Part shown: in pieces, positions 165-17,456 of the stretch
Layout: every line of letters begins with the position of its first letter
Position numbering within the stretch: position 1 is the stretch's first letter
IMG/VR virus record: IMGVR_UViG_3300045256_000050
Location: 1-64,000 of that record
Strand: one strand, 5' to 3'
DNA: 64,000 nucleotides
The notes under the pieces: model-generated
What the model saw: the letters and a program-made list of their open reading frames with translations, nothing else
What the model was told of the DNA's origin: nothing
The model's database searches: none
Position numbers and translations under genes: made by a program

Positions 165-305
165 ATGCGCTCTAAACGCCCTCGCAAGTTTATTAACATG
201 CGGGGAGCGTTCACCATCGGGTTACTAACAAACACCCCGGCACTGTACATCCTGGCGGCAGTGGCGGCACTGTCCGCCTACCTTTCGATGCGAAAGCATC
301 TCTGA
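165..305 (+). CDS. Small membrane protein (46 aa)
   Basis: ATG at 165, hydrophobic C-terminal half, stop is the TGA of the repeat at 303. Confidence 0.55.
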   Translation: MRSKRPRKFINMRGAFTIGLLTNTPALYILAAVAALSAYLSMRKHL

Positions 306-321
306 CACCGACTGGAGAGCC

Positions 322-507
322 ATGAAGGACGCACAAACCATCCACGACATCACCCGGTACATCACCCGGACACACGACCTGAGCGACAGCGATAAGCTCG
401 CCGTCGCCCTGGAACTAATCGAGTCCATCCCCAGAGCCTTCGAGTTCGAGGACGGGCTGCGGAAGGCGGTGGAGCGGGAACGCCTGACACCGGCTGGACA
501 AGCGTAA
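322..507 (+). CDS. Hypothetical protein
   Basis: GGAG RBS; reads through the repeat and stops at its TAA (LTPAGQA*). Confidence 0.75.
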   Translation: MKDAQTIHDITRYITRTHDLSDSDKLAVALELIESIPRAFEFEDGLRKAVERERLTPAGQA

Positions 508-526
508 GAAGGGCACAAAGGAATCA

Positions 527-698
527 CACCACGGTCCTCGGGCACGACCCGTAGGATAGAACCTCAGCCATCAGGACGCACGCCAAGCGGCCTGTGAGGG
601 TTCGCATACCACCGCAAAGCCACCGGGCAATGCGGCCGTGCGTCCACAAGGGGCGACCGGGCGATTTAACCAAGAGGTATGGCAACCGTGCCGTGGTG
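527..698 (+). ncRNA. Candidate structured ncRNA
   Basis: Nested helices CACCACGG 527-534/CCGTGGTG 691-698 and GGACGCACG 574-582/CGTGCGTCC 637-645; crossing pair CATACC 605-610/GGTATG 676-681; no convincing ORF. Confidence 0.45.
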
Positions 699-705
699 CG
701 TTATC

Positions 706-775
706 ATCGCAGTGTCAGTATTCGGTAACGGCCCTCTGTCGGAGGGAGTAGCGGGTTCGATCCCCGCCTGCGATG
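706..775 (+). tRNA. tRNA-Asp(GTC), atypical D-arm, no encoded CCA
   Basis: Acceptor ATCGCAG/CTGCGAT, anticodon loop CTGTCGG, T-arm GCGGG-TTCGATC-CCCGC, discriminator G. Confidence 0.65.
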
Positions 776-935
776 CTCAGTGAATAAGGTTTCCTACGGA
801 CCCCGAAGGGGATTCACGCCCGTAGGTGTAAAGGTTACACGGTGAAAATCCGTGATGTGACGCTACCCCTGTTCACTGAATACACAACTGACACCCACTG
901 GAAGAACGTCACCCACAACCCCACGGAGAAACGGA

Positions 936-1211
936 ATGCTCACCCTCGTCGGTCGTCTGCTCGGTCTGTTCGTCCTGCTCCTCGGCCTCGGCCTGCTCGT
1001 CGGCGGCGTCTACCTCGGCATCTGGGAGATGCTGGTCGGTGGCATCATCGACATCATCAACCAAGTGAAAGCCCCGTCCACCGACGCCGGGACCGTGGCG
1101 TGGGCCATCGTCAAAATCATCTTCTTCGAGCTACCCATCGTCGTCGGGTTCTGGCTCGGCATCATCCTCATGACGTTCGGCGGCACCGCCCTGTTCCACA
1201 AGTCCCGCTAA
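936..1211 (+). CDS. Membrane protein (2-3 TM segments)
   Basis: GGAG RBS, long hydrophobic segments. Confidence 0.8.
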   Translation: MLTLVGRLLGLFVLLLGLGLLVGGVYLGIWEMLVGGIIDIINQVKAPSTDAGTVAWAIVKIIFFELPIVVGFWLGIILMTFGGTALFHKSR

Positions 1212-1220
1212 AACCCACAC

Positions 1221-1250
1221 CCACAACCCCGGCTAAAACCGGGGTTGTGG
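1221..1250 (+). terminator. GC-rich hairpin (terminator or processing signal)
   Basis: CCACAACCCCGG-ctaaaa-CCGGGGTTGTGG; no U-tract. Confidence 0.45.
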
Positions 1251-1306
1251 AACTCCTGACACCCACTGTAGCAGCGTAACAACCGCCTAACCAACGAGTC
1301 ACACAC

Positions 1307-1732
1307 ATGACCACGATTACCACGGCCGACTACGCTGCACTGAAGGCGAAAATCGACGCCTACCACAACTCCATGAGAACCCTGTTCCCCAACCAGAACG
1401 GGTTCACCCCCGAACAAATCAAGCAAATCGTCAAGCACGCCCGCATCGACCGGGAACCGACCAACGACGAACGGAGCAAGGTCGAAACCTACGAGTTCTG
1501 CCACAACCCGCCGGATCGGTACTTCCTCTACATCAACGAGAACGACAAGACGGCAACCACCTGGACCGGCGAAATCCTCGGCACCGTCTACCTCGGACAC
1601 GCCTACCGGGATAACTTCGGCGGCAAGCGGCGTAGCGTCACCGTCCGGGCCGTCAACGGCTACACCTACCACGGCACCTACTTCTGCTCCACCGGGAACT
1701 ACGCCCGGATCAAGCGGAGCAAAGCCGCCTGA
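1307..1732 (+). CDS. Hypothetical phage protein
   Basis: Lies between repeats; stop is the repeat TGA. Confidence 0.85.
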   Translation: MTTITTADYAALKAKIDAYHNSMRTLFPNQNGFTPEQIKQIVKHARIDREPTNDERSKVETYEFCHNPPDRYFLYINENDKTATTWTGEILGTVYLGHAYRDNFGGKRRSVTVRAVNGYTYHGTYFCSTGNYARIKRSKAA

Positions 1733-1776
1733 CACCGACCGGGGAAGCGTAACAACCGCCTAACCAAGAGAAACAC

Positions 1777-2022
1777 ATGAAGAAAGCTCCGAAGCTCACC
1801 CCGGAACAACTGGCGAAGGCCGTCGCCCAAACCTACGCCTACCTCGAAGGTGACACCGGCAAGGTACACGGCAGCTACGACGGCGGCGGCTGGATCACCG
1901 TCACCGGACACAACCTCCCCGCCCACCCCGATCTGAGGGACAAGTACCCGAACGGGTGGAGCATGATGGAACGCATCCGCACCAGTGAGGCACGTCAGCG
2001 GCTCATCGAAGCCTGCCGCTGA
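1777..2022 (+). CDS. Hypothetical protein
   Basis: Lies between repeats; stop is the repeat TGA. Confidence 0.8.
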   Translation: MKKAPKLTPEQLAKAVAQTYAYLEGDTGKVHGSYDGGGWITVTGHNLPAHPDLRDKYPNGWSMMERIRTSEARQRLIEACR

Positions 2023-2061
2023 CACCGGCTGCCGAAGCGTAACAACCCACACGAGACACAC

Positions 2062-2391
2062 ATGGACCCGATCAAGGCCCAACTGGAACAAGCCGGGTAC
2101 ACCAACGTCGTCGCCATTCGCAAAGGGCGATGGTACACGGCGACCAAGAACAACGACCCGTGTGCCATCCTCTACCAGCACGACAACGCATGGCACTGGT
2201 TCCACGCCGTTCACCAAGCAACCGCCAGCGGTAGCTCCGCAAGCCAAGCGGCCAACGGCGGGCTGGGGGACGCAATCAGCGACGACGACGACATGAAGCA
2301 GTACAAGCGGATGATCCGCCAAACCCCGCCCGGTATCCTCGATCTGGCCGGAGTGTTCGCCGCCTACTGCCAAGTCCAGAACGACAACTGA
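2062..2391 (+). CDS. Hypothetical protein
   Basis: Lies between repeats; stop is the repeat TGA. Confidence 0.8.
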   Translation: MDPIKAQLEQAGYTNVVAIRKGRWYTATKNNDPCAILYQHDNAWHWFHAVHQATASGSSASQAANGGLGDAISDDDDMKQYKRMIRQTPPGILDLAGVFAAYCQVQNDN

Positions 2392-2407
2392 CACCGACTG
2401 GAGGGGC

Positions 2408-2530
2408 ATGAAAGTCACACTGCTCGCCGCAATGCTCGGACCGCCAGCATTCCTCGCAATGCTGGCCTACCTGCAAAGCCTCCTGACACCGACTGCAACG
2501 GCACAACCCAACCCCAAAGGAACACGATGA
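2408..2530 (+). CDS. Small hydrophobic peptide (40 aa)
   Basis: GGAGG RBS, ATG at 2408, reads through the repeat, ATGA overlap with the next gene. Confidence 0.45.
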   Translation: MKVTLLAAMLGPPAFLAMLAYLQSLLTPTATAQPNPKGTR

Positions 2531-2808
2531 AGGCCACCAACGAAGGCACCGGGCACAACCGCACCATCCGCCTCACCGGACTGCCCGGCACCAACGGCAC
2601 CCTGACGGAACTGACAATCACCGTCAACTACACCAACACCCCCAACGACGGCAGTACGCTCGACAAGGCCGTCACCCTGGATAGCGTCGTCATCCCGGAA
2701 CTGCTCCGGGCCATCAACGCCACCGGGCAACTCGACACGTTCTTCTCCGGCCTCAAGCCCAACACCGGGGACGCCTTCAAGCCCGAAACCGACGCCCGGC
2801 CGGGCTAA
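2527..2808 (+). CDS. Hypothetical protein
   Basis: AAGGA RBS, protein-like composition. Confidence 0.8.
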   Translation: MKATNEGTGHNRTIRLTGLPGTNGTLTELTITVNYTNTPNDGSTLDKAVTLDSVVIPELLRAINATGQLDTFFSGLKPNTGDAFKPETDARPG

Positions 2809-2817
2809 AGTCAACCT

Positions 2818-2890
2818 GTCGCATTCGTCTAGCGGTCTAGGACACTGCCCTTTCAAGGCAGTAACACGGGTTCGAGTCCCGTATGCGACA
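2818..2890 (+). tRNA. tRNA-Glu(TTC), no encoded CCA
   Basis: Full cloverleaf: acceptor GTCGCAT/ATGCGAC, D-arm GTCTAGCGGTCTAGGAC, anticodon arm CTGCC-CTTTCAA-GGCAG, T-arm ACGGG-TTCGAGT-CCCGT. Confidence 0.93.
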
Positions 2891-2912
2891 CTAATAACAA
2901 CCGGAGCGAACC

Positions 2913-3110
2913 ATGAAGTGTGCCAGAACAGCGTGCCAAACCCCACTAGACGGCGAGCAACACATCGCCATCTGGAACGAACCGAGTACCGGCCAACCCC
3001 GGCTATACTGCGTGTTCTGCGGCATGAAAATCATCCGGGGCAACGAACACGATACCCTCAAGCTACAACACGAACTCCGGGAACCCCTGACACCGACTGA
3101 CGAAGCGTAA
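2913..3110 (+). CDS. Small Zn-finger-like protein
   Basis: CxxxxC and CxxC motifs; ends in the repeat (LTPTDEA*). Confidence 0.75.
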   Translation: MKCARTACQTPLDGEQHIAIWNEPSTGQPRLYCVFCGMKIIRGNEHDTLKLQHELREPLTPTDEA

Positions 3111-3136
3111 CCAACACCCCACCGAAGGACACGAAG

Positions 3137-3856
3137 ATGCTCACGTTCAGCAAGGCCAGTGAGTTCATCAGCAAGGGCCGCAAGAAGACGGAGCGGAAGC
3201 TGGCGGGTAGCACGGTCGCCCGCATCGTGGACGACAACACCATCGCCGTCAAGCTGTACGACACGGACATCGTTCTCATCCACCGGAACGGGAACTACAC
3301 CCTCAATACCGGCGGCTGGCGGACCGTCACCACGAAAGAACGGATCAACGAGTACACCCCCGCCCGCCTGTACCAAGAGAAAGGCAACTGGTACATCGGT
3401 GACACCGAGTTCACTGAGGGAATGGTGGTCGATTCCACCGGGAAGATCGTCAAGGGCGGCAACGTCCGGGCCGCTAAGAAGCGGACGAAACTCATGGCCG
3501 ACGTGAAGCGGTACATCAACGGGTTCGCCGCACAAGCCGTCAAGAACGGGGGACTGGAAAAGCCCGGCAGCGGGGATTGCCTCATCTGCCAAATCGGGTG
3601 CCAACACCCCCAACAGGACAACCCGGAAAGCCACGTCCTAGACCACATTCGGGAAAACTACTACGTCCCGAGTCTGCTGGTACTGGCTATCCGCCACCGC
3701 AACCCGAACGAGTCCGCCGTGCCTATCGTCTGGGGCATCTGCGACCGGGAAGTGAAGGAAGGCAATACCAAGTACCTGAAAACGGTACTCCGGGCATACT
3801 TCCGCAAGATCATGCCGAAGCTGACGCAAGCCGTGACACCGACTGTGGCAGCGTAA
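3137..3856 (+). CDS. Hypothetical phage protein
   Basis: AAGGA RBS; ends in the repeat (VTPTVAA*). Confidence 0.85.
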   Translation: MLTFSKASEFISKGRKKTERKLAGSTVARIVDDNTIAVKLYDTDIVLIHRNGNYTLNTGGWRTVTTKERINEYTPARLYQEKGNWYIGDTEFTEGMVVDSTGKIVKGGNVRAAKKRTKLMADVKRYINGFAAQAVKNGGLEKPGSGDCLICQIGCQHPQQDNPESHVLDHIRENYYVPSLLVLAIRHRNPNESAVPIVWGICDREVKEGNTKYLKTVLRAYFRKIMPKLTQAVTPTVAA

Positions 3857-3886
3857 CAACAACACACCCCAACAAAGGGTAACACG

Positions 3887-4381
3887 ATGGGCCGCACGAT
3901 GCAACGGATTCGGAACAAGCCGGGCAGCACACACCAAGCCCGGCGACACTTCCACAAGTGTTCCCGAATCGGGAACATCATCAAAGTGGAAGCCGTCCGG
4001 TACACCGCCATGTTCCTCAGTCAAGACAAAACCCACCGCTACCCGATTACTAACGAAGTCATCCGGGTAACGGGCACACACGGCACCGTCCGACTACACG
4101 GCCTCTGCTGGGGCTACGGCGGAACCGGACCGTCCGCCCTCCGGGACTTGCTACTCTTCCTCGGACTAAAGGAAGGGCACGCCCGGCTCGCAGCGTTCAA
4201 CACCCACCGACGGCAACACTCGCAAATCGGGGTAGACTGGACCCTGGAGTTCAACACGACCGACGGGCTAGGCCGACCGGGGTACGTCGTCCTGACACCG
4301 GCCGAAGGGGAGAAGCGGGGCTGGCAACGGTCAGAGGCTCTGGTCGAGCTACCCCCCGTCACCCTACTCGGCAGGGAGTAA
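3887..4381 (+). CDS. Hypothetical phage protein (WGYGGTGP motif)
   Basis: ORF follows a repeat and RBS. Confidence 0.75.
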   Translation: MGRTMQRIRNKPGSTHQARRHFHKCSRIGNIIKVEAVRYTAMFLSQDKTHRYPITNEVIRVTGTHGTVRLHGLCWGYGGTGPSALRDLLLFLGLKEGHARLAAFNTHRRQHSQIGVDWTLEFNTTDGLGRPGYVVLTPAEGEKRGWQRSEALVELPPVTLLGRE

Positions 4382-4382
4382 G

Positions 4383-4601
4383 ATGGACCCGACGTGCGGC
4401 ACACTCGCCCGGATGATCTTCAACATGGTGCGGGACGACTACGACCCCCGCCCCACCATCTACCGATGCGTCATGCTCATATCCCCCGAACACCGGCGGG
4501 ACGTGGCTAAGGCTATGGCCGACGACTTCCGACGCCATAGCCGGGAAGATAAGGAAATCGGTTCCCACGTCATCATCGGCTGGCTCGCCGGTATTAACTG
4601 A
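4383..4601 (+). CDS. Hypothetical protein
   Basis: GGGAG RBS, coupled to the upstream gene. Confidence 0.65.
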   Translation: MDPTCGTLARMIFNMVRDDYDPRPTIYRCVMLISPEHRRDVAKAMADDFRRHSREDKEIGSHVIIGWLAGIN

Positions 4602-4876
4602 GGATACGGCTAATAATCACCCGGTTATTAGCCGACCTGACACCGGCTGGTGAGGGGCAGGACAGTAAGCAGCAACCGCCCAAAACGACACGAATTGCCA
4701 CGATTGTAACTTGACAACCGTTCCGCCCTGGAAGGCCACTGGAAAATGTCAAGTTACAGACGGGATGCTGGCAAGCTGTCAGGAAGGGTAAGATGGGCGG
4801 TCTAAGGCCCGCCGACTGTCTCGTTGCCACGCACGCACACGCACGAGAGTTGATTAAGAAACATTACTCAACGTGC
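4602..4876. other. Candidate replication origin region
   Basis: Non-coding; inverted repeats CGGCTAATAA/TTATTAGCCG (about 4607-4634) and TGTAACTTGACA 4705-4716/TGTCAAGTTACA 4747-4758; C-rich to G-rich skew switch. Confidence 0.45.
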
Positions 4877-4926
4877 TGACACCGGCTGTCGTGGTGTTAA
4901 GAAACAACCAACCGGGGTAGAGTAAC

Positions 4927-5559
4927 ATGCGTCAAGCGAAGGTGAACCTGTACTCGGTGAACGAACTGACGGGCAAGGCGAAGGACAAGGCAATCGAAGC
5001 CGGTCGGGAGTGGCATAACGCCACGTTCGATTCGGCCGAGATGACGGAACAACTGAAGGAGTACGCCCACGAGAAGCACGGCGTCAAGGCCGACGACGTG
5101 AACTGGTCGATTTCCTTCAGTCAAGGCGACGGTGTGGCGTTCTACGGCACCATCGACCTAGACGAACTGGCGAAGAAGCACGAGAACGTCAAGAAGCTGG
5201 TGGACGCCGCCGCCGAGATCGACGTGACCCTGAGCGTCACCAGTGAGGGGCGGAACAACCGCTATCACCACTGGAACAGCATGAGTGTGACGGCCGAGCA
5301 TGACACCGGCTATCGGTACAGTGAGAGGTTCGCCGACGACGACGAGACGCCGCTGATGGAGAAGGCGGACAAGCTCGCCACGGAGCTACAGGAAGCGGTC
5401 GCCGAGATTCTGAAGGCGGCAAGCCGTGACACCCATAGCTGGGGCGAGAAGTGCGTCCTGGCCGACAGTGAGGATTCGGCCATCGTGGAACTGCTGGAAG
5501 AGAACGAGTGGGAGTTCGACGTGAACGGGAAGCCGTTCGGCCACCCGGAAGCGGAGTAG
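4927..5559 (+). CDS. Conserved-looking acidic phage protein
   Basis: N-terminal 'LYSVNELTGKAKDKAIE' and C-terminal 'NEWEFDVNG' patterns resemble a widespread phage/plasmid hypothetical family. Confidence 0.85.
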   Translation: MRQAKVNLYSVNELTGKAKDKAIEAGREWHNATFDSAEMTEQLKEYAHEKHGVKADDVNWSISFSQGDGVAFYGTIDLDELAKKHENVKKLVDAAAEIDVTLSVTSEGRNNRYHHWNSMSVTAEHDTGYRYSERFADDDETPLMEKADKLATELQEAVAEILKAASRDTHSWGEKCVLADSEDSAIVELLEENEWEFDVNGKPFGHPEAE

Positions 5560-5739
5560 TGTACAAACAACCATCCCCCGGAGCGGCAATCTCCGGGGGA
5601 TGGTGCGGCAAGTGGCAGAACAGGCAGTCAACGGGGAGTTGACAACTACACTTTAACCGCCAAACGCCCCGTGTCAACTTTTCCCGGAATCTGACACCGG
5701 ATGTCGGGGAGCAACGACAACCCAAGAGAGGGTCAGACG

Positions 5740-6111
5740 ATGTTCTGGGGCAGCATTCAAGAGCGGGAGCAGTGGGAGTACGAAGCGGGCATGGCGAACG
5801 AGTGGCAGAACGCCTTCGCCGTGTCGCAGATGGAACGCAAGCCCGACGACCGGGCGGCGGCTGAGGAACTGGTTTCTCTCGGCCGTTACGTCGTGGTGCG
5901 TGAGGGGGTGGTTTTCTGCCCCCGGACCGACGCCAGCATGGGCACCGCCGTCTACATGCTGGGGGACTTCGAGACGCACGACGAAGCCCTGGAGATGGCA
6001 CGGGAAGAGGGCCGGGACGACGACGGGGATTCGTGGGTGCGGGTGATGACGCCGACGCCGGTAATCCTCAACCCGCCGACCCCGCTAAACCCGTCGGATA
6101 TCCCGTTCTGA
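5740..6111 (+). CDS. Hypothetical protein with an SSB-like DIPF C-terminus
   Basis: CCCAAGAGAGGG RBS module, ATG at 5740; stop is the repeat TGA. Confidence 0.8.
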   Translation: MFWGSIQEREQWEYEAGMANEWQNAFAVSQMERKPDDRAAAEELVSLGRYVVVREGVVFCPRTDASMGTAVYMLGDFETHDEALEMAREEGRDDDGDSWVRVMTPTPVILNPPTPLNPSDIPF

Positions 6112-6167
6112 CACCGACTGCAAGAGGGCGGGGCAACTTGCCCCGCCTAACCAACTCAAGGTGACTG

Positions 6168-6668
6168 ATGCACGCTTCCAAGCTGGCCGAACTGACTGCC
6201 GAAGTGAACGCCGTGAATCTGGCGAACGGGTACGCCAACGAGTTGTTGCCGCCGCTGCTGGAGTTCTTCACCCCGCTGGTCGGGCAGAAGATCGTCAAGG
6301 CGGACGGCTCGCTCTTGGCGAAGCTGGAGAGCAAGCTGCCGAAGTTCCCGGCGGTGACGGGTCGGCCGGGGCAACACCCGCACGCCACGGTGATGACCTA
6401 CCGGCACCGCAGCGACTACTCGCTCGCCTGGACGGTCAAGGTGTGTTGGCCGATCCCGCCGCACACCTGCACCTACTACGAGCGGACGCTGTACGTCGGG
6501 GACATGAGCGGCGACGTGCTGAAGGAGATGACGAAGCACCGGGAGCCGTGGAAAACGGACTACACGGTCGAGGCCGCTGTCGCCGCAATCGAGAAGTACG
6601 AAGCGGCGAAGAAGGCGGCGGACGACGCCCGTTCGGCGTGCTGGCCGTTCGAGAAGTTCATCCGGTAA
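6168..6668 (+). CDS. Hypothetical protein
   Basis: AAGGTG RBS after a repeat. Confidence 0.8.
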   Translation: MHASKLAELTAEVNAVNLANGYANELLPPLLEFFTPLVGQKIVKADGSLLAKLESKLPKFPAVTGRPGQHPHATVMTYRHRSDYSLAWTVKVCWPIPPHTCTYYERTLYVGDMSGDVLKEMTKHREPWKTDYTVEAAVAAIEKYEAAKKAADDARSACWPFEKFIR

Positions 6669-6783
6669 GGTGGTGGGAATTTGAGGCGGGGACTTAAACC
6701 CGCCTCTTTCCCAACGCAACATAACAAACATTATCGGACGTTGACACCGGCTGGAGCGGCGTAACCTTCACTGAGGACACGAG

Positions 6784-11026: not shown

Positions 11027-11080
11027 CACCGACCGCTAGGGGGCGAGGACGACTCGCCCCCTTCACTCACTGAGGCGACG

Positions 11081-11332
11081 ATGGAAAGCCACTACGAGAT
11101 CAACGTCAGCAAGTGCGAGAACCCCGGCACGAAGATCGGGACGCCCCGCTACAAACACTTCTTCGCCACGGCCCCCCGCAGCATCAAGAGCAAGCACGAG
11201 TTGCGGGTGTTGCTCGACGAGTTCAAGGCGAAGTTCCCGGAACCCGAGTACCTGATTACGGCGACGTACAACGAGTGCATCGGGTACAGCGTGGACACGA
11301 GCGACGAGCGGCTGACGGTGGACAAGTCCTGA
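11081..11332 (+). CDS. Hypothetical protein
   Basis: CACTGAGG RBS; stop is the repeat TGA. Confidence 0.8.
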   Translation: MESHYEINVSKCENPGTKIGTPRYKHFFATAPRSIKSKHELRVLLDEFKAKFPEPEYLITATYNECIGYSVDTSDERLTVDKS

Positions 11333-11365
11333 CACCGGCTGTCGGGGCACCAACGAGGACAACCG

Positions 11366-11728
11366 ATGAGCTTCCTGACCAAGCGGGCCGACAGCTACGC
11401 CAAAGTCGCCGAGAACTACCGGCGGCTCGAAGGGGTGTGCATCAAGTTCGGGCTGGTGCCCAAGAGCGGCGACCTGTTCACTGAGGAAAGCTGGCCGATC
11501 CCCGTCCATGAGGACGACCGGCCGCTGGAATACTGGCCGAGTGAACGGGTGGGCAGCGTGCTGTTGACGAAGCCGGGCACGTTCCCGGAACACGTCGCAG
11601 CGGTGCGGGTGAACGCTGACGGCTACTACGGCCACGTCATCGGGGCGGGTGGCAATCACGACCTGTACGCAAGCGACCTGGAGCATCTGCTGCAACGGGC
11701 CGGGCTGACACCGGCTGCCGGGGTGTAA
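11366..11728 (+). CDS. Hypothetical protein
   Basis: GAGGA RBS; ends in the repeat (LTPAAGV*). Confidence 0.8.
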   Translation: MSFLTKRADSYAKVAENYRRLEGVCIKFGLVPKSGDLFTEESWPIPVHEDDRPLEYWPSERVGSVLLTKPGTFPEHVAAVRVNADGYYGHVIGAGGNHDLYASDLEHLLQRAGLTPAAGV

Positions 11729-11744
11729 CCAAGAGGACAACGAG

Positions 11745-12041
11745 ATGCCAGTGATCGTGAAGTACGACAACGGGTTCGACACGAAGCTGCTCAAGGCTGA
11801 CAAGCTCGAAGCTCTGGTCAGCCAGCACGGTTCGCCGACGTTCGACACGGCACGCAACCTGTGGGTGTTCGCCGACGGCACCACCTACCTGTTCAAGAAC
11901 CCGTTCCCCGGCGACCGGCGGACCGTGACCGGGTTCTCGGTGGTGCCCTGGACGGACGGCGACCGTGACCTGCGAGAGAAGCTGAGCCGCCCCGACCCGA
12001 TCCGGCGGTGCTGCTGGTGCCGCTGCTACCACTACAACTGA
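11745..12041 (+). CDS. Hypothetical protein with a Cys-rich C-terminus
   Basis: GAGGA RBS; stop is the repeat TGA. Confidence 0.75.
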   Translation: MPVIVKYDNGFDTKLLKADKLEALVSQHGSPTFDTARNLWVFADGTTYLFKNPFPGDRRTVTGFSVVPWTDGDRDLREKLSRPDPIRRCCWCRCYHYN

Positions 12042-12066
12042 CACCGGCTGCTGAGGCGTGGAGGAC

Positions 12067-12250
12067 AGCATGGTAAACGCAAGAGACGGGCCGGGTTGAG
12101 TGACGGTCGTCATTCAACAATACTCTGTGTGGGAGACTGAGCATGACCCGTGCAAGGCCACCGCCGGTATAACTCAACCTGTCGCATACCGGATTCGCAC
12201 CGAAGGCAACCTGCGAGCCACGAACCCACCGGAAAGGAGCGTGTACCATG
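12067..12250 (+). ncRNA. Candidate structured ncRNA occupying a cassette slot
   Basis: Closing helix CATGGTAAACGC (about 12068-12079)/GCGTGTACCATG (12239-12250); inner helix GGGTTGAGT/ACTCAACCT; alternative CCGGTAT/ATACCGG; no good ORF. Confidence 0.5.
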
Positions 12251-12359
12251 AAGCGGTCGTAACCCTTACCTCATGATGATCGGCCGGGGCGGGGAGGAGA
12301 CTAACCCGCCCCCTTCTGACACCGACTGTCGAAGCGTAACAACACCAGAGGACGGGACG

Positions 12360-12557
12360 ATGGACACGAGCAAGCTGAGCGGCTGGCAGCGTCAGGTTCG
12401 GCAGAACATCCGCAACGCCTTCCTCACCGCCACCCGTGCGGAGTTGGAGAAGGCGTTGAGCAACTACCCCGATGACTTCAGTAAGGAGTGCATCCGGGAG
12501 ATCATCGCCGAGTGCGATGCGGCCGGGGTGGACAATGCCGGTAAGCGGCCTGCCTGA
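12360..12557 (+). CDS. Hypothetical protein
   Basis: GAGGA RBS, ATG at 12360; stop is the repeat TGA. Confidence 0.75.
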   Translation: MDTSKLSGWQRQVRQNIRNAFLTATRAELEKALSNYPDDFSKECIREIIAECDAAGVDNAGKRPA

Positions 12558-12604
12558 CACCGGCTGTCGGGGTGTGAGACGGACAACCCAAGAGAGGGAA
12601 GACG

Positions 12605-13141
12605 ATGCAGATTGTCAACGGCAAGCTCGTGCTGGGCAAGAAGAACTGCAACTGCGGCGACGGCACCGTGTCCACCCGAGTGACCTGCAAGTCGTGCAAC
12701 GGCAGCGGGCGGGGCAAGCGGGGCGGGGCGAGGGGGTGCAAACCGTGCTACGGCAACGGCACCACCTACGACCACGACAAGCGGAGCGTGTGCCCGCAGT
12801 GCAACGGCAACTTCAAGGATCACGACGACGAAGATACCTGCGACTACCTTCCCGCCGGGGTGTTCGCCGGGTTCACCTTCCGGGTCTACTACGGCGGGCA
12901 GATGACCATCGGTGAGGCGTTGATGGGGCTGGGCTGTGTGTTCTCGTGTGGCGACTACGGGGCCGCATGGAAGGAACGCAACGACGAGAAGTTGATCGCC
13001 GACGTGCGACAGCACAGCGGGGTGCAAGCCACGAAGGTTGTCGATAAGGACAACAACGTGGCCGACCACATCGGGATTTTCGTGACGCCGAGCGGGTACA
13101 CGGTGAAGCCGGTGTTCGTGACACCGGCTGTCGGGGTGTGA
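12605..13141 (+). CDS. DnaJ-type zinc-finger (CxxCxGxG repeats) protein
   Basis: CNCGDG, CKSCNGSG, CKPCYGNG, CPQCNG motifs; ends in the repeat (VTPAVGV*). Confidence 0.85.
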   Translation: MQIVNGKLVLGKKNCNCGDGTVSTRVTCKSCNGSGRGKRGGARGCKPCYGNGTTYDHDKRSVCPQCNGNFKDHDDEDTCDYLPAGVFAGFTFRVYYGGQMTIGEALMGLGCVFSCGDYGAAWKERNDEKLIADVRQHSGVQATKVVDKDNNVADHIGIFVTPSGYTVKPVFVTPAVGV

Positions 13142-13200
13142 TAGGGACGGACAACGGGGGCGAGCAACACCGCTCGCCCCTCACCTTCACTGAGGCGACG

Positions 13201-13446
13201 ATGACCCCGACGAAGCACAACATCATCATCGACGGCGACGTTTCGGCGAGCGACCTGATCGACTCGTGGAACAACGGGAACAAGAGCTACGTTCTGGACA
13301 AGTTGGAGAACGACCACGCCGGGCTGACGGCTCTGGTTCTCGTGAGCGGGGCGACCGACAAGCGGCTGAGTCTCGCCGCCTGCAACGAGATCACCAACAA
13401 GCTGATCGACCGGCGGCGGGAGATGATGCTTCGGGCCGAGCGGTGA
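13201..13446 (+). CDS. Hypothetical protein
   Basis: CACTGAGG RBS, ATG at 13201; stop is the repeat TGA. Confidence 0.8.
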   Translation: MTPTKHNIIIDGDVSASDLIDSWNNGNKSYVLDKLENDHAGLTALVLVSGATDKRLSLAACNEITNKLIDRRREMMLRAER

Positions 13447-13482
13447 CACCGGCTGTCGTCGTGTAACCAAGAGGACACGACG

Positions 13483-13758
13483 ATGGTCAAGCTCAACGCT
13501 CGCACCCGGATGTTGGTCAACGACGCTCTGCACGACATGTGCAAGCGTCGTCACCGCTCGATCCCCCTGTCCGACATCACTTCGCTGCTCGCCACCCACG
13601 GGCTGAAGATTGAGGAATGTATCCTCACCGGCCGGGTCGGCAACGCACAGATTGACGTGCTGACCACCGACGGGCAGGACGTGAATAGCTGGCTGGTGCT
13701 GTCGTGGATGAAGGGCGACATCGACCACCAGTGGGAAGTGAACGCCTACCTGTCCTGA
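13483..13758 (+). CDS. Hypothetical protein
   Basis: GAGGA RBS; stop is the repeat TGA. Confidence 0.8.
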   Translation: MVKLNARTRMLVNDALHDMCKRRHRSIPLSDITSLLATHGLKIEECILTGRVGNAQIDVLTTDGQDVNSWLVLSWMKGDIDHQWEVNAYLS

Positions 13759-13814
13759 CACCGGCTGCTAGGGGGCGAGGAAGACACTCGCCCCCTTCAC
13801 TGAGGACAACGCTC

Positions 13815-14039
13815 ATGACGATTCAGGCTCCCGCCCCGTTCCACGACGGCACGTTCGTCCTGCACAAGATCGAACTCAACGGGCACAAGTATTCCGCATG
13901 GTTCGGCAAGGACGGGGTTGTGTTCTCGGCCGAGCGGTTCAGCCGGGACAATCAGAAGACGTTCAACGTCCCGCTCAACCGTCAGAAGAACGTGGCCGAG
14001 CAGTTGACCAAGATCGGCAAGCGGTACACGGGCCGCTGA
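13815..14039 (+). CDS. Hypothetical protein
   Basis: CACTGAGG RBS, ATG at 13815; stop is the repeat TGA. Confidence 0.8.
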   Translation: MTIQAPAPFHDGTFVLHKIELNGHKYSAWFGKDGVVFSAERFSRDNQKTFNVPLNRQKNVAEQLTKIGKRYTGR

Positions 14040-14084
14040 CACCGGCTGTCGAAGTGTAAGAAACCCACACACTGAGGACGAACG

Positions 14085-14312
14085 ATGTACGCTCTGCTCG
14101 CCGAGTTCCGCCGGGGCAACAAGTACAACATCACCCTCAAGACGGGCAACGACGTGGCGAAGCTGGCCGACCTGGGGTGGATCGTGTTCGACGACCCGGC
14201 GGTGCTGGTCGCCGAGATGGAGAGCGGCAAGAAGATGCTCAACATGAAGTACGAGAAACGGGAGCAGATCATCGCCTACCTCCGGGCGATGACACCGGCT
14301 GTGGCGGTGTAA
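14085..14312 (+). CDS. Hypothetical protein
   Basis: CACTGAGG RBS; ends in the repeat (MTPAVAV*). Confidence 0.8.
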   Translation: MYALLAEFRRGNKYNITLKTGNDVAKLADLGWIVFDDPAVLVAEMESGKKMLNMKYEKREQIIAYLRAMTPAVAV

Positions 14313-14335
14313 GGCAACCCAAGAGAGGGACGACG

Positions 14336-14605
14336 ATGGCCTACCGCCTGACGCTGACGAAGGGTGAGCGGGATGCGATTGACTGGATCGGTCATCGCTA
14401 CCGCCACGGCGACGAGTTCTATCGCCTGCTGATGGAATGCACGGCGACCCCGGACGACGCCGATTGGGACGACGAGCGGGATATCGAGTACACGATCCCC
14501 GAACACGTCGCCTGGACGATGGGCGAGATCATCGACGAAGGGCTGGACTGCTTCGCCGACGAACTGTGCAGCAAGCTCCGGGCCTTCCGCAACCGCATCG
14601 TGTGA
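14336..14605 (+). CDS. Acidic hypothetical protein
   Basis: CCCAAGAGAGGG RBS, ATG at 14336; stop is the repeat TGA. Confidence 0.8.
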   Translation: MAYRLTLTKGERDAIDWIGHRYRHGDEFYRLLMECTATPDDADWDDERDIEYTIPEHVAWTMGEIIDEGLDCFADELCSKLRAFRNRIV

Positions 14606-14662
14606 CACCGGCTGCTAGGGGGCGAGGACAACCCTCGCCCCTCACCTTCACCGAGAGAAGAC

Positions 14663-14920
14663 ATGAACCGCACCCCGAGCATCCTGTCCGGCCTCCGCAC
14701 CGCCACCGTCGCCCCGGTCGCCCCGGTCAACGTGAGCCACAAGCGGGTTGACCTGTTCAACAGCATGTGCAACGGCACCGAGATCACGATCATGTCCCGG
14801 CCCGACGGCAAGTACCACACGGGCATCGTGACCAGCATCGCCCGTGAGGACGGCAGCGGGTACAAGTTCCTGGTCCGCCTGCACAACAGCCCGACGATCC
14901 ACTACGTCGTGATGATGTGA
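14663..14920 (+). CDS. Hypothetical protein
   Basis: Stop is the repeat TGA. Confidence 0.8.
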   Translation: MNRTPSILSGLRTATVAPVAPVNVSHKRVDLFNSMCNGTEITIMSRPDGKYHTGIVTSIAREDGSGYKFLVRLHNSPTIHYVVMM

Positions 14921-14966
14921 CACCGGCTGACGGGGCGTAACGATCACCCGCACTGAGGACACGACG

Positions 14967-15161
14967 ATGGCGAAGAAGATGCACACGACGGCCCCCATCA
15001 AGGACAAGGGGGCCGAGTTGTTCGCTCCGATCAAGCTCAGCGTTGGGCTGGGCCGGGTCGGGCACCAGCAGCACACCGGCGGCACCGGGTTCCACAACAG
15101 CCGGAAGCGGGCTGGCAACCGCTCGCAGCAGACCCGCAAGGCGGTCGCCGAGTACGCCTGA
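14967..15161 (+). CDS. Small basic protein
   Basis: CACTGAGG RBS; stop is the repeat TGA. Confidence 0.8.
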   Translation: MAKKMHTTAPIKDKGAELFAPIKLSVGLGRVGHQQHTGGTGFHNSRKRAGNRSQQTRKAVAEYA

Positions 15162-15197
15162 CACCGCCTGTGGTGGTGTAAGAAACCCAAGAGAGGG

Positions 15198-15452
15198 ATG
15201 CAGATGAGTCGTGAACGCTCGCTGGTTCGTGCGATCCGTGAAGTCAAGGTGCGGAAGCACCACCGTGACCTTGCCAAGCTGATCGCCGACCAGATGGACC
15301 CCGAGAACGTCGGGATCGACGGCCGACCGATCTACCGCAACGTCCACGTCGCTCGCCGCCACCTGCTGATCGACTGGCAGAAGTCGTTCCGCAAGCGTCG
15401 GTGCCGACGGTGTGCCCGGCGAGTCGCCAAGTGCGAACTCCGGGCTGCGTGA
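15198..15452 (+). CDS. Arg-rich small protein
   Basis: CCCAAGAGAGGG RBS; stop is the repeat TGA. Confidence 0.75.
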   Translation: MQMSRERSLVRAIREVKVRKHHRDLAKLIADQMDPENVGIDGRPIYRNVHVARRHLLIDWQKSFRKRRCRRCARRVAKCELRAA

Positions 15453-15528
15453 CACCGGCTGTAGGGGTGTGAGAGGGGCGGGCGAGTGACCCGCCCCTGA
15501 CCTGCGACCTTCACTGAGGACACGACAC

Positions 15529-15942
15529 ATGGCGACCCGGCTCTACCCGCACACGAAGAACACCGTCATCATCGAGAAGCTGCTGGGCGTGCCCGAAGGC
15601 ACGGCCCTCCGGCACGCCGCCCTCAACGAGCCGTTCAAGCAGGCGAAGGCCAAGCTCAACGAGGGGTTCGCCGACCTGACGCTGGAGCAGCAGGCCGAGC
15701 GGCGGCGGGAGTACATGCGACTGGACGAGGCCGAGTGGGACGCCAACAACTCCAGCGAGGAGATCGCCAAGTACGACGGGTTCTTAACCTTCGGGTGGGG
15801 CCGGGTGGTGCATCGGCACTGCTCCGAGCCGAGCGGCTACACCAACGACCCGGTGCTGGTCGCCCAAATCCTCCGGGCACAGGGGGTGACGCTCCCGCCC
15901 GACGTGAAGATCGAAGACCTGGAAGGGCTGGGGTGGTGCTGA
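15529..15942 (+). CDS. Hypothetical protein
   Basis: CACTGAGG RBS; stop is the repeat TGA. Confidence 0.8.
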   Translation: MATRLYPHTKNTVIIEKLLGVPEGTALRHAALNEPFKQAKAKLNEGFADLTLEQQAERRREYMRLDEAEWDANNSSEEIAKYDGFLTFGWGRVVHRHCSEPSGYTNDPVLVAQILRAQGVTLPPDVKIEDLEGLGWC

Positions 15943-16009
15943 CACCGGCTGTAGGGGTGTGAGAGGGGCGGACGAGTGAGCCGCCCCCACACCCAAGAGA
16001 GGGAACACG

Positions 16010-16342
16010 ATGGCGACCCGCAACCGCTGGAACAAGTGGAACATCCGGGCCAAGCTGAAGACCGACTTCAAGTGGTGCCGCCGGGCACTGATCGTGCTGT
16101 ACCAGCGGCAGACCGCTGACGAGCAGTCGGCCACCCGGACCAAGCACGACAACGACCGGGGCTTCAACCAGCCCGACGCCCGGCGGGGCAGCGAACTCGC
16201 CCGCAAGGCCATGACGCCGGTGCTGTTCGAGCCGTGGGAAGTGATCGAGGCCCGCAAGCTCCTGATGAAGTACGCCGGGCAACTCGCCCGGATCGCCAAC
16301 GAGAAGGAGCGGGCGGCGAAGGCCCGGCCGGTGACGGTGTGA
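16010..16342 (+). CDS. Conserved phage hypothetical protein
   Basis: 'RALIVLYQRQTADEQ...N.RGF..PDA...KYAGQL' motif seen in many phage proteins; stop is the repeat TGA. Confidence 0.85.
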   Translation: MATRNRWNKWNIRAKLKTDFKWCRRALIVLYQRQTADEQSATRTKHDNDRGFNQPDARRGSELARKAMTPVLFEPWEVIEARKLLMKYAGQLARIANEKERAAKARPVTV

Positions 16343-16424
16343 CACCGGCTGAGGGGGTGTGAGAGAGACGGACAACGGGGCGGGTGAGTGACCCGCCCCT
16401 CACCTTCACTGAGGACAGACGACG

Positions 16425-16619
16425 ATGCCGACCTTCGGACTCAAGCACAACATCGGCAGCAACACGACCACCGCCGGGAAGTTCGACAGCAGCGGCCTGA
16501 CCTACCTCGGCATGCTGAGCGGTGAGAAGGAGATCAAGTGGACGACGATGACCCTGGCGGCGGGCATCTACCACATGTACACGAACGGCAGCGAGATGTA
16601 CCTGTTCCCGGAGCAGTGA
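16425..16619 (+). CDS. Hypothetical protein
   Basis: CACTGAGG RBS; stop is the repeat TGA. Confidence 0.8.
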   Translation: MPTFGLKHNIGSNTTTAGKFDSSGLTYLGMLSGEKEIKWTTMTLAAGIYHMYTNGSEMYLFPEQ

Positions 16620-16687
16620 CACCGGCTGAGGGGGTGTGAGAGAGGGGCGGGCGAGTGACCCGCCCCCTTCACTAAGGAGCATCGCAC

Positions 16688-16870
16688 ATGTCGAAGTACA
16701 ACGTCCGCCGCCTGAACCACCTGCTCGCCAAGCACACCGCCTTCCGCTCGCTCGCCGACCTGCTCACGAGCGTGGCCGGTGGCTACACCCCGACGATCAT
16801 CTGCCGCACCTGCCAGCACGGCGAACTCGTCCGCCTGCTCCGGGACAACGGGGTGGCTGTCCGGGTCTGA
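16688..16870 (+). CDS. Hypothetical protein
   Basis: AAGGAG RBS; stop is the repeat TGA. Confidence 0.75.
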   Translation: MSKYNVRRLNHLLAKHTAFRSLADLLTSVAGGYTPTIICRTCQHGELVRLLRDNGVAVRV

Positions 16871-16916
16871 CACCGGCTGAGGGGGTGTAACGAGGACACA
16901 ACGGAGGACGCAAGAC

Positions 16917-17402
16917 ATGGCGACGAAGACCAAGACGGCCACGGTCCCGACGACGACGGTGCTGGACGAGACGAAGGCCGGTCGCAAGCGGGCGACGAAG
17001 GCCAAGCCGGTGACGGGTCACACCGGCAAGCAGAAGATGGCCCTGGTGCTGGGCGGGGCCGCAACGTTCGTCCTGGCCCTGAGCGTCTGGGAAGTGACGA
17101 CGGCCCTGACGACGCTCACGAAGATGCCCCTGGTGATCGCCGCACTGATGGCGGTGGGGATCGACGTGGTGATGGTGCTGTGCGAGATGGCGGTGATCGC
17201 CGCCCCCGACACGGACGCCGCCCGGTGGGGTAAGCGGTACGTCGGAACGACGGTCGGCCTCAGCATGTTACTCAACGGGCTGGCCGCTACGCAGCACGCC
17301 GAGGGGATGTGGTGGCTGCTCGCTGCCCCGGTCGGTGCGATCATGCCGGTGCTGGTCTACATGGCCTTCCGGGTGGCGGGCAGCCTGTACGTTAACAAGT
17401 GA
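16917..17402 (+). CDS. Four-TM membrane protein (DUF2637/SpdA-like)
   Basis: Four hydrophobic helices, 'GID' and 'LSMLLNG' motifs; last gene of the array. Confidence 0.8.
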   Translation: MATKTKTATVPTTTVLDETKAGRKRATKAKPVTGHTGKQKMALVLGGAATFVLALSVWEVTTALTTLTKMPLVIAALMAVGIDVVMVLCEMAVIAAPDTDAARWGKRYVGTTVGLSMLLNGLAATQHAEGMWWLLAAPVGAIMPVLVYMAFRVAGSLYVNK

Positions 17403-17421
17403 CACCCTGCGAGTTGAGTAA

Positions 17422-17456
17422 CAACAGCCCGCACTCGGCGGGCTGTTGCATTTTTT
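17422..17456 (+). terminator. Rho-independent terminator closing the array
   Basis: CAACAGCCCGC-actcg-GCGGGCTGTTG followed by a T-tract. Confidence 0.8.

What the first reader, a model, noticed from the sequence alone, without database searches (positions are those of the whole stretch)
165..17456. A 17-kb gene-cassette-like array: about 46 unrelated small genes delimited by about 47 copies of one 23-bp palindromic site
Seen: nearly every gene boundary from 303 to 17400 carries TGACAC-CGRCTG-N5-GYGTRA, always on the + strand, at spacings of about 95-815 bp. The outer hexamers form an imperfect inverted repeat (TGACAC versus GTGTAA/GTGTGA/GCGTAA; a perfect match would be GTGTCA) around an 11-bp asymmetric core. 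The units between repeats are mostly single unrelated ORFs. The run ends at a strong terminator (17422), and the motif is essentially absent from the other 46 kb. Known: inverted arms around an asymmetric core are the layout of site-specific recombination sites and of dimeric protein operators. One-gene-per-repeat arrays are known from integrons (attC), pdif modules, and the promoter/stem-loop cassettes (PeSL) that shuffle ORFans in T4-like phages. This motif matches none of those consensuses. Inference: a phage-borne cassette system for acquiring and shuffling early or host-takeover genes, or alternatively a dedicated promoter/operator repeated in front of every early gene. The array probably continues beyond the left edge of the window.
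Basis: partly seen in the sequence, partly recalled or inferred. Interest (0 to 1): 0.92.

Follow-up and report, generated by a model that had tools for sequence, protein, structure and literature searches.

The report
Repeated gene-junction signal in a huge phage
A huge phage (about half a megabase) puts the same 12-letter signal in front of nearly every gene in a block of more than 33 kb of tiny orphan genes; it is most likely a phage-specific promoter, and gene-sized swaps between related phages begin and end at it.

Summary
The window holds 45 clear and 2 degenerate copies of the motif between 303 and 16890. All lie on the + strand at gene junctions, and there are none elsewhere in the 245-kb record. 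The conserved unit is an asymmetric 12-mer, TGACACCGRCTG, with a weaker tail. It is not a true 23-bp palindrome. Neighbouring contigs extend the array at least 16 kb to the left (72 copies in 33.7 kb).

The phage has a T4-type capsid module and is only about 48% assembled. Related huge phages carry homologous blocks with the same or a GC-adapted core: TGATACCAACTAG in a 35% GC genome (about 110 copies over 93 kb), and GGACACCCGATA in another. There the core also precedes tRNA genes, the first gene after a divergent intergenic region, and a conserved sigma-factor gene. No sigma-70-type promoter and no tyrosine or serine recombinase is present.

Best reading (about 0.5): a compact phage-specific promoter, one per gene, whose TGA also closes the upstream ORF. 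Near relatives from sludge, soil and another metagenome show gene-sized replacements and insertions that end at the motif. This resembles T4 PeSL cassettes and fits homologous exchange, not an integron. An RNA-level signal is not excluded. No transcript 5' ends were available.

The parts
1..17456 (+). Window part of a one-directional block of about 46 small genes (40-239 aa). The whole known block runs from 16,082 bp left of the window to 17,456.
   Evidence: My gene calls agree with the JGI calls returned. There is no paralogy.
303..16890 (+). 45 copies of the junction motif (core TGACACCGRCTG plus tail). Starts: 303, 485, 889, 1257, 1730, 2020, 2389, 2484, 3088, 3834, 4293, 4638, 4877, 5301, 5692, 6109, 6742, 6970, 7323, 7710, 8138, 8549, 8791, 9308, 9728, 10414, 11024, 11330, 11706, 12039, 12317, 12555, 13119, 13444, 13756, 14037, 14290, 14603, 14918, 15159, 15450, 15940, 16340, 16617, 16868. 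Each is 23 bp long.
   Evidence: The TGA at motif positions 1-3 is the stop codon of the upstream gene in 24 of 45 copies. The TAA or TGA at positions 21-23 is the stop in 8 of 45. The next ATG usually lies 36-64 nt after motif position 1. Copies at 2484, 4293, 5301 and 8549 lie inside called genes.
303..325 (+). First copy in the window. The Shine-Dalgarno GGAG and the ATG of gene 322-507 lie inside the motif tail. The copy at 2389 is built the same way.
   Evidence: These two copies cannot supply a normal leader for the very next gene.
7710..7732 (+). Copy whose tail is the 5' arm of a strong hairpin that closes about 20 nt downstream.
   Evidence: Fold (-25.9 kcal/mol).
9728..9770 (+). Motif copy followed at once by a G+C-rich hairpin with a T-rich tail. 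This is the only terminator-like site inside the array on the + strand.
10101..10123 (+). Degenerate copy (TGACACCCCCTG...) at the end of gene 9792-10103.
   Evidence: 19.1 bits in the matrix scan.
10768..10790 (+). Degenerate copy (TGACACCATCTG...) at the end of gene 10474-10770, followed by a hairpin.
   Evidence: Sequence printed.
16868..16890 (+). Last copy, 49 nt before the last gene of the block (16917-17402).
17422..17448 (+). Intrinsic terminator that closes the block: 11-bp stem, then a T run.
2818..2891 (+). tRNA-Glu (UUC) inside the block, placed straight after gene 2527-2808 with no motif of its own.
508..888 (+). Unit with no ORF between two motif copies. It is strongly folded and contains a tRNA-like T-arm.
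   Evidence: There is no Rfam or ARAGORN match.
12042..12316 (+). Second unit with no convincing ORF. Part of it (12233-12340) is conserved in two relatives.

Best explanation
The repeat is a compact, strand-specific expression signal. It stands in front of nearly every gene of a one-directional block of more than 33 kb of small, mostly orphan genes. The phage is huge (about 0.5 Mb) and has a T4-type capsid module.

Most probably it is a phage-specific promoter. Host RNA polymerase, guided by a phage-encoded specificity factor, would recognise the 12-nt core (here TGACACCGRCTG; clade consensus GAYACC-N-R-M-T-R). Transcription would start in the purine-rich stretch a few bases downstream, at about motif positions 14-20. 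The prime candidate for the specificity factor is the sigma-70-family protein conserved at the head of the homologous block in relatives. Each small gene would then get its own short leader, sometimes beginning with a stabilising hairpin.

Two side effects follow. The core starts with TGA and the tail often holds TAA or TGA, so the signal also closes upstream reading frames, which lets genes be packed end to end. The same 25-50 bp recurs at every junction, so it is also where gene-sized replacements and insertions between related phages begin and end. That exchange would be by homologous recombination, as proposed for T4 PeSL cassettes, and not by a dedicated recombinase.

Shown here: the anatomy, the confinement to one block, the conservation across the clade, the placement before tRNA genes and first-in-block genes, the lack of sigma-70 promoters and of recombinases, and the mosaic relatives.
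For: 1. The motif is confined to one block and strictly oriented: 72 copies on the + strand and 0 on the - strand in 33.7 kb, and none in the other 228 kb.

2. The block has no sigma-70-type promoters beyond chance (2 found, 2.5 expected). It has only two + strand terminator-like sites in 18 kb. The motif is therefore the only recurring candidate to drive more than 90 genes.

3. The same core occurs in the homologous blocks of relatives with very different base composition.
- TGACACC[C/G]RCTG in L363, L368, L213, L180 and L244 (58-68% GC).
- T[G/A]ATACCAACTAG in G004 (35% GC, MCP 84% identical, about 110 same-strand copies within 265-359 kb).
- GATACCAACTA, CATACCRACTA and GGACACCCGATA in L378-L381.
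A signal kept across hosts this different points to a phage-encoded reader.

4. In G004 the core lies 28 nt before tRNA-Lys (between two tRNA genes) and 34 nt before tRNA-Glu. It also precedes units with no ORF. It is therefore not a translation signal.

5. In G004, L378 and L379 a copy lies 45-65 nt before the first gene after a divergent intergenic region. No co-directional gene ends there.

6. In the AT-rich relatives some genes carry plain TTGACN-N17-TAnAAT promoters and others carry the motif, at the same distance from the ATG. The two look like alternatives for one role.

7. A sigma-70-family gene is conserved at the head of the block in G004 and L378-L381. None of the four genomes searched has an RNA polymerase beta-prime gene.

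8. Where a hairpin follows the motif, it starts right after the core. This fits transcripts that begin with a 5' stem-loop.

9. There is precedent for short single-element promoters read by phage sigma factors: phiEco32 gp36, AATGTA centred at -11.5 (PMC12276001).

10. Exchange at the motif.
- A 4.3-kb contig from a sludge metagenome is colinear with the window at 90-99% identity. Three segments are replaced or inserted, and their ends fall at motif copies 12317, 13444, 14290, 14603 and 15159.
- Contig L215 joins different neighbours, with the switch inside a motif.
Against: - No transcript 5' ends exist for this phage. No RNA run holds it.
The only sigma-like gene found here is gp55-like, and that type is also present in relatives that lack the motif.
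- The motif has no recognisable -35/-10 geometry.
- In two copies (303, 2389) the ribosome site and ATG lie inside the motif tail. A start downstream of the core could not serve the next gene there.
- The candidate sigma gene itself carries the motif, so its first expression needs another route.
- In G004 many motif copies are followed by a hairpin plus a T-rich stretch that looks like a terminator. Hairpins lie either just before or just after the motif. Both facts fit an RNA processing or stability signal equally well.
- Breakpoints at the motif are partly expected anyway, because every intergenic space is little more than the motif. Breakpoints also occur inside genes.
Confidence: 0.5

Rival explanations
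1. The motif acts in the RNA. The block would be transcribed as long polycistronic RNA. The 12-nt sequence would be bound or cut by a phage-encoded (or host) RNA-binding protein or endonuclease. Alternatively it would modulate the adjacent hairpins (termination, anti-termination or stability). Either way the result would be gene-sized, hairpin-protected messages.
For: - The motif always lies on the transcribed strand.
- Strong hairpins lie directly after (15-32%) or directly before (8-17%) the motif.
- In G004 many hairpins are followed by T-rich tracts like terminators, with no room for a promoter before the next ATG.
- Copies 303 and 2389 keep the ribosome site inside the motif, so the motif must be transcribed there.
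Against: - It needs transcripts of 30-100 kb from promoters that were not found.
- A processing site between two tRNA genes is not needed.
- The first copy of the block in three lineages stands in a divergent intergenic region, where a promoter is required.
- Most copies have no hairpin at all.
- There is no Rfam match and no covariation.
Confidence: 0.22
2. The motif is an operator or roadblock. A phage DNA-binding protein would bind the asymmetric sites and stop or silence transcription of the block at a set time, like the stoperators of Cluster A mycobacteriophages.
For: - It is an asymmetric site of 12-13 bp, in one orientation relative to transcription, with many copies in short intergenic spaces next to stop and start codons. 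This geometry matches stoperators (comparison from my own knowledge of phage L5).
- Some partial dyad symmetry exists.
Against: - One site per gene is far more than a block needs.
- The sites are confined to one block rather than spread over the genome.
- No repressor or lysogeny gene was seen, and no integrase.
- This reading leaves the block without promoters.
Confidence: 0.1
3. The motif is a site-specific recombination site. It would be the target of a dedicated recombinase that excises and inserts single-gene cassettes, as in integrons or pdif modules.
For: - One motif per gene, all in one orientation, with unrelated ORFs between.
- Replaced and inserted gene-sized segments in near relatives end at motif copies.
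- GC-rich genes flanked by the resident AT-type motif in G004.
Against: - No tyrosine or serine recombinase in 245 kb here or in the 91%-complete G004.
- Gene order is largely conserved in L363 and L368.
- The site is a 12-nt asymmetric core without the paired binding arms of known sites.
- Breakpoints also fall inside genes and beside the junction motif.
- The motif also precedes conserved core genes and tRNA genes.
Confidence: 0.05
4. The motif is a translation signal: a stop-codon context that promotes termination and re-initiation at the next start codon.
For: - The motif always begins with TGA (TGA or TAA in G004). It is the stop of the upstream gene in 24 of 45 copies.
Against: - 13 copies follow genes that ended earlier or follow no gene.
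- The motif precedes tRNA genes and units with no ORF.
- In L381 the core is shifted 4 nt away from the TGA.
Confidence: 0.03

Closest known systems
PeSL cassettes (promoter-early stem-loop) of T4-type phages (Arbiol et al. 2010, PMC2839356; Comeau et al. 2014, PMC4122927)
   Same: A conserved regulatory element recurs between small orphan genes in hyperplastic, one-directional regions. It is followed by a Shine-Dalgarno site and a start codon, and hairpins are often attached. Insertions, deletions and replacements between close relatives end at the element (searches compared).
   Different: PeSLs are built on host sigma-70 promoters (-35, N17, -10) with the stem-loop just upstream. Here the element is a 12-nt non-sigma-70 core. 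Hairpins are optional and lie on either side. The density is one per gene over 33-100 kb. The core is conserved across phages whose genomes range from 33% to 68% GC.
Short single-element promoters read by phage sigma factors (T4 late promoter with gp55; phiEco32 gp36 promoters, AATGTA at -11.5, PMC12276001)
   Same: A short conserved element with no -35 partner, specific to one block or class of phage genes. Sigma-family genes are present in the phage clade.
   Different: The sequence is unrelated.
Stoperators of Cluster A mycobacteriophages (L5 gp71 sites; from my own knowledge)
   Same: Asymmetric sites of 13-14 bp, many copies, one orientation relative to transcription, in short intergenic gaps near stop and start codons.
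   Different: Stoperators are spread over the whole genome of temperate phages and bind the immunity repressor. Here the sites are confined to one block, no repressor or integrase is seen, and the density is much higher.
Integron cassette arrays (attC sites and IntI)
   Same: One repeat per gene, same orientation, unrelated ORFs, and gene-sized turnover.
   Different: There is no integrase. There is no attC-type folded site. Gene order is largely inherited. The repeat also precedes core genes and tRNA genes.

Membership tests
Integron | IntI-type tyrosine recombinase encoded next to the array | tested here: not met
   PF00589 gives no match in the 245-kb record or in the 91%-complete relative G004. 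PF00239 gives none either. The record here is only 48% complete.
Integron | attC site: 57-141 bp imperfect inverted repeat with paired R/L boxes, folding as a single strand | tested here: not met
   The conserved unit is a 12-nt asymmetric core. The putative arms pair in 64% of cells with no covariation.
Integron | Cassette order and content vary freely between relatives | tested here: inconclusive
   23 genes are colinear in L363. Gene-sized replacements and insertions occur in the X6 contig and in L215.
PeSL (T4-type phages) | Sigma-70-like early promoter (-35, 17-bp spacer, -10) inside the element | tested here: not met
   The scan finds 2 sites in 18 kb against 2.5 expected, and neither is at a motif. 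There is no conserved -10 at the right distance.
PeSL (T4-type phages) | Stem-loop immediately upstream of the promoter | tested here: inconclusive
   Strong hairpins lie upstream of 8% and downstream of 15% of copies here. In G004 the figures are 17% and 32%.
PeSL (T4-type phages) | Lies between orphan genes of hyperplastic regions, followed by a Shine-Dalgarno site and a start codon | tested here: met
PeSL (T4-type phages) | Indels and replacements between close relatives end at the element | tested here: met
   The pieces of X6 contig 26 end at motif copies 12317, 13444, 14290, 14603 and 15159. The switch in L215 lies inside a motif. Caveats: these are assembled contigs, L215 has low coverage, and intergenic space is nearly all motif.
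Stoperator system (Cluster A mycobacteriophages) | Asymmetric 13-14-bp sites, one orientation relative to transcription, in short intergenic gaps | tested here: met
Stoperator system (Cluster A mycobacteriophages) | Sites spread over the genome and bound by the immunity repressor of a temperate phage | tested here: not met
   The sites are confined to one block. No integrase was found. Binding cannot be tested with these tools.
Phage sigma-dependent single-element promoter | Phage-encoded sigma-family factor present | tested here: inconclusive
   A sigma gene stands at the head of the block in G004 and L378-L381. In this record only a gp55-like sigma was found, and half the genome is missing.
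Phage sigma-dependent single-element promoter | Transcripts start a fixed short distance downstream of the element | not testable with these tools
   No RNA run holds the phage.

The most novel reading that the evidence does not exclude
The core is not a promoter. It would be the recognition site of an undescribed phage machinery, conserved across a clade of huge phages, that acts at every gene junction. Two forms are possible. One is a sequence-specific RNA endonuclease or anti-terminator that turns 30-100-kb transcripts into hairpin-capped single-gene messages. The other is a recombinase of no known family that moves single-gene cassettes between phages of different biomes.
Probability: 0.15. 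Interest if true: 0.85.

Novelty: new variant of a known kind. Interest (0 to 1): 0.62.

Why it matters
Huge phages devote 30-100 kb to arrays of 100-190 tiny genes of unknown function, presumably for host take-over. How these genes are expressed and how they turn over is not known.

This locus gives a concrete handle. A 12-nt junction signal is conserved across a clade of huge phages from hot springs, soil, sludge and water, and it adapts to genome GC content while keeping GAYACC-N-R-M-T-R. I found no paper that mentions it.

If it is a promoter, three things follow:
- It defines a new phage-specific promoter class with a testable sigma candidate.
- It allows annotation of transcription units in uncultured megaphages.
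- It offers a compact orthogonal promoter part.

It also extends the PeSL idea, that regulatory repeats serve as exchange points for orphan genes, from T4 relatives to a distant huge-phage lineage. Single genes are shared at up to 99% identity between biomes.

Tried and rejected
- Nucleotide searches of the phage collection found nothing.
- The viral-contig pattern scan found only a second assembly of the same phage; the other hits were chance matches inside conserved genes.
- Searching relatives with the GC-rich core and up to 2 mismatches missed the AT-type variant. It was found only by k-mer counting.
- Sigma-70, ECF-type, MotA-box and T7-type promoter layouts were considered. They were rejected because the spacing or the second element does not fit.
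- No T7-like RNA polymerase matched, but that search rang in no control genome, so it is uninformative.
- No beta-prime gene was found.
- An RNA hairpin formed by the two motif arms is rejected. There is no Rfam family.
- A tandem-duplication origin of the genes is rejected.
- Walking further left failed at the contig end.
- RNA runs listed at 5-7% of words were not usable.
- In G006 a different repeat (TTTCCGAACCT, inverted repeat, GGTCTTCC) could be an ECF-type promoter or a terminator. I could not decide between them.
- The T-arm-containing non-coding units of the window and of G004 share little beyond the T-arm.

Full report
**What the window is**

The window is the first 64 kb of a 244,986-bp viral contig. 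CheckV rates it 48% complete. It comes from hot-spring or microbial-mat metagenomes. The contig encodes these T4-type structural proteins:
- a gp23-type major capsid protein
- a gp20-type portal with an intein
- a T4-type large terminase
- a tail sheath and baseplate parts

The window itself holds a methionyl-tRNA synthetase, a CCA-adding enzyme and a histidine kinase. The capsid protein is 80-88% identical to that of many large uncultured phage contigs of up to 533 kb. It is 75% identical to the 595-kb uncultured phage LR756511.1, and only about 30-33% identical to cultured T4-like and jumbo phages. So this is a huge phage with a T4-type capsid module, not a close T4 relative.

Yes.
- The 12-nt core with up to one mismatch gives 45 + strand copies from 303 to 16890.
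- Two more degenerate copies lie at 10101 and 10768.
- A weight matrix scanned over the 245 kb at 14 bits or more finds 45 hits in the array, none elsewhere on the + strand, and one on the - strand inside a gene.

Conservation starts abruptly at position 1.
- Positions 1-7 (TGACACC) never vary, and positions 8-12 (GRCTG) nearly never vary.
- The tail (G15, G18, Y19, G20, T21, R22, A23) is only partly kept.
- The inverted repeat is weak. Only 64% of cells pair. Pairs 2-22 and 5-19 are mostly unpaired. The left arm is invariant, so there is no covariation.

I therefore describe the element as an asymmetric 12-mer with a loose tail.

**Anatomy of the array**
- The block holds about 46 genes of 40-239 aa, all on the + strand. 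The JGI gene calls agree.
- BLASTP finds no paralogy among them. One matches a Pfam family of T4-like cyanophage proteins, and 8 of 45 match PHROG families of unknown function.
- The TGA at motif positions 1-3 is the stop codon of the upstream gene in 24 of 45 copies. The TAA or TGA at positions 21-23 is the stop in 8 more.
- The next ATG usually lies 36-64 nt after motif position 1. It lies 70-90 nt away when a G+C-rich hairpin is inserted.
- When the upstream gene ends earlier, a strong hairpin usually fills the gap just before the motif. Overall only about a fifth of copies have a strong hairpin on either side.
- The block ends at a clean intrinsic terminator at 17422-17448.
- It also holds a tRNA-Glu gene and two units without convincing ORFs.

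**The array runs off the left edge**

Exact-protein look-ups found neighbouring contigs of the same phage. They extend the block by 16,082 bp with 26 more copies and about 45 more small + strand genes. In total there are 72 copies on the + strand and none on the - strand in 33.7 kb. The head of the block was not reached.

**Relatives with the same motif**

The same core occurs at gene junctions in several places:
- short soil and freshwater contigs L213, L180 and L244 (59-68% GC)
- a 14-kb contig, L363, with 34-35 copies of TGACACC[C/G]RCTG
- L368

L363 shares 23 genes with window 4927-17402, in the same order, at 45-85% amino-acid identity. Gene-sized gains and losses lie between them.

**Relatives with a variant motif**

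K-mer counting in G004 found about 110 same-strand copies of T[G/A]ATACCAACTAG within 265-359 kb. G004 is 458,813 bp, 35% GC and 91% complete, and its capsid protein is 84% identical. The copies stand at the junctions of about 190 small genes. This is the same core written in AT-rich letters.

Three window genes have homologues in that block, in a different order.

At the conserved head of the block the order is: two leftward genes, a gene of about 500 aa, a sigma-70-family gene, an AAA ATPase, and later an RNA ligase and CsrA. There the core appears as GATACCAACTA (L379, L380), CATACCRACTA (L378) or GGACACCCGATA (L381, 61% GC). The clade consensus is GAYACC-N-R-M-T-R.

More distant relatives lack it:
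- G006 and LR756511.1 do not have it.
- G006 instead has a sigma-70-like class and a second repeat.
- A sister lineage (L364-L367) uses TAAAAGATTGTACC at every junction.

**What the context says about function**

Several contexts rule out a translation signal or a 3'-end signal of the upstream gene:
- In G004 the core lies 28 nt before tRNA-Lys, between two tRNA genes, and 34 nt before tRNA-Glu.
- It precedes units with no ORF.
- In G004, L378 and L379 it stands 45-65 nt before the first gene after a divergent intergenic region, where no co-directional gene ends.

Other points bear on a promoter role:
- In the AT-rich relatives some genes have plain sigma-70 promoters and others have the motif, at the same distance from the ATG.
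- The window block has no sigma-70 promoters beyond chance.
- The core is kept across phages with 33-68% GC, so a phage-encoded reader is the economical assumption.
- A sigma-family gene sits at the block head in five relatives.
- No RNA polymerase beta-prime gene is present.
- Where hairpins follow the motif they begin right after the core. Both lineages show a purine-rich stretch and a pyrimidine-purine step at positions 16-20.

From this I infer a start site a few bases after the core. A published precedent is the phiEco32 gp36 sigma, whose promoters are a single AATGTA element centred at -11.5 (PMC12276001).

**Mobility**

No tyrosine or serine recombinase is found in the 245 kb here or in G004. 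Even so, near relatives are mosaic.
- Laying contigs of four runs on 11001-17000 showed a 4,340-nt sludge contig that is colinear with the window. Five blocks match at 90-99% identity.
  - 1,694 nt replace window 12340-13443.
  - About 360 nt are inserted after 14313.
  - 620 nt replace 14614-15181.
  - The block ends sit at motif copies 12317, 13444, 14290, 14603 and 15159.
- Soil contigs hold single cassettes at about 90-93% identity.
- Contig L215 from another metagenome joins the end of one gene to a different neighbour, with the switch inside a motif. It has low coverage and could be chimeric.
- L219 is syntenic at 92% identity but diverges inside two genes.
- In G004 the last 10 kb of the block is 51-57% GC in a 35% GC genome, yet it carries the resident AT-type motif.
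- In the sister lineage a clean 301-bp one-gene indel lies 38 nt after a junction motif and is flanked by a 3-bp repeat. It is not in the motif.

Together this fits homologous or illegitimate exchange that uses the shared junction sequence, as proposed for T4 PeSLs (PMC4122927). It does not fit a dedicated site-specific system. One caveat applies: the intergenic space is nearly all motif, so any surviving whole-gene exchange must end near a motif.

**Verdict**

The element is most likely a phage-specific promoter that doubles as a frame-closing junction and as an exchange point for orphan genes (confidence about 0.5). The rivals are:

| Rival reading | Confidence |
|---|---|
| RNA-level processing, stability or termination-control signal | 0.22 |
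| Operator or roadblock | 0.10 |
| True recombination site | 0.05 |
| Translation signal | 0.03 |

It works like a PeSL but fails the PeSL membership test on the promoter type, and it fails the integron tests. I found no paper that mentions either core. I rate it a new variant of a known kind. It is of fair interest because it is clade-wide in huge phages and directly testable.

Noticed in passing
window 508-888: A 380-nt unit with no ORF lies between two motif copies. It is strongly folded and ends in a tRNA-like T-arm (GCGGGTTCGATCCCCGC). It has no ARAGORN or Rfam match. A unit in G004 (357403-357600) has the same T-arm but little else in common.
   Followed up: partly
window 12042-12316: A unit with no convincing ORF. 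Its last 100 nt are conserved in two relatives (76% in L215, about 89% in the sludge contig). It may be a small RNA or a decayed gene.
   Followed up: partly
window 1-4000: The leftmost part of the array has negative GC skew (-0.11 to -0.13) and very high AT skew, unlike the rest of the block. My codon model, trained on long genes, miscalled a - strand ORF there.
   Followed up: no
window 31937-33070, 46492-48141, 60106-61626: The phage encodes a histidine kinase with an ethylene-receptor-type N-terminal domain, a methionyl-tRNA synthetase and a CCA-adding enzyme.
   Followed up: no
G000 118489-121065 and 181874-183556 (outside the window): The T4-type portal gene carries an intein. A group II intron reverse transcriptase/maturase with an HNH domain is also present.
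   Followed up: no
G000 151171-151341 (- strand, outside the window): A gp55-like sigma factor (region 2 only). It is nearly identical in its core to those of G006 and LR756511.1, which implies a shared late-promoter class across the clade.
   Followed up: partly
G004 (loci L300-L304), 322-358 kb: GC content climbs from 35% to 57% along the small-gene block of a 35% GC phage. The junction motif stays the AT-type, which suggests import of genes from GC-rich relatives.
   Followed up: partly
G006 (loci L324-L350), 95-230 kb: This relative lacks the motif but has 15-43 sigma-70-like sites (TTTACAACCA, spacer, GTAnnAT). It also has 25-56 copies of TTTCCGAACCT, an inverted repeat with compensating changes, then GGTCTTCC. 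That second repeat is either an ECF-type promoter or a conserved terminator.
   Followed up: partly
L364-L367 (ENA crustacean metagenome contigs): A sister lineage (42% GC) carries about 40 copies per 14 kb of a different junction motif, TAAAAGATTGTACC. It also begins with a stop codon.
   Followed up: partly
G004 277156-278781 (L300:17156-18781): A TnpB/Cas12f-like gene sits inside the small-gene block of the relative.
   Followed up: no
window 2928-2935 and window 1-13: Independent assemblies of the same phage break at these two places. That hints at strain variation there. A second strain at lower depth is visible in the source runs.
   Followed up: partly
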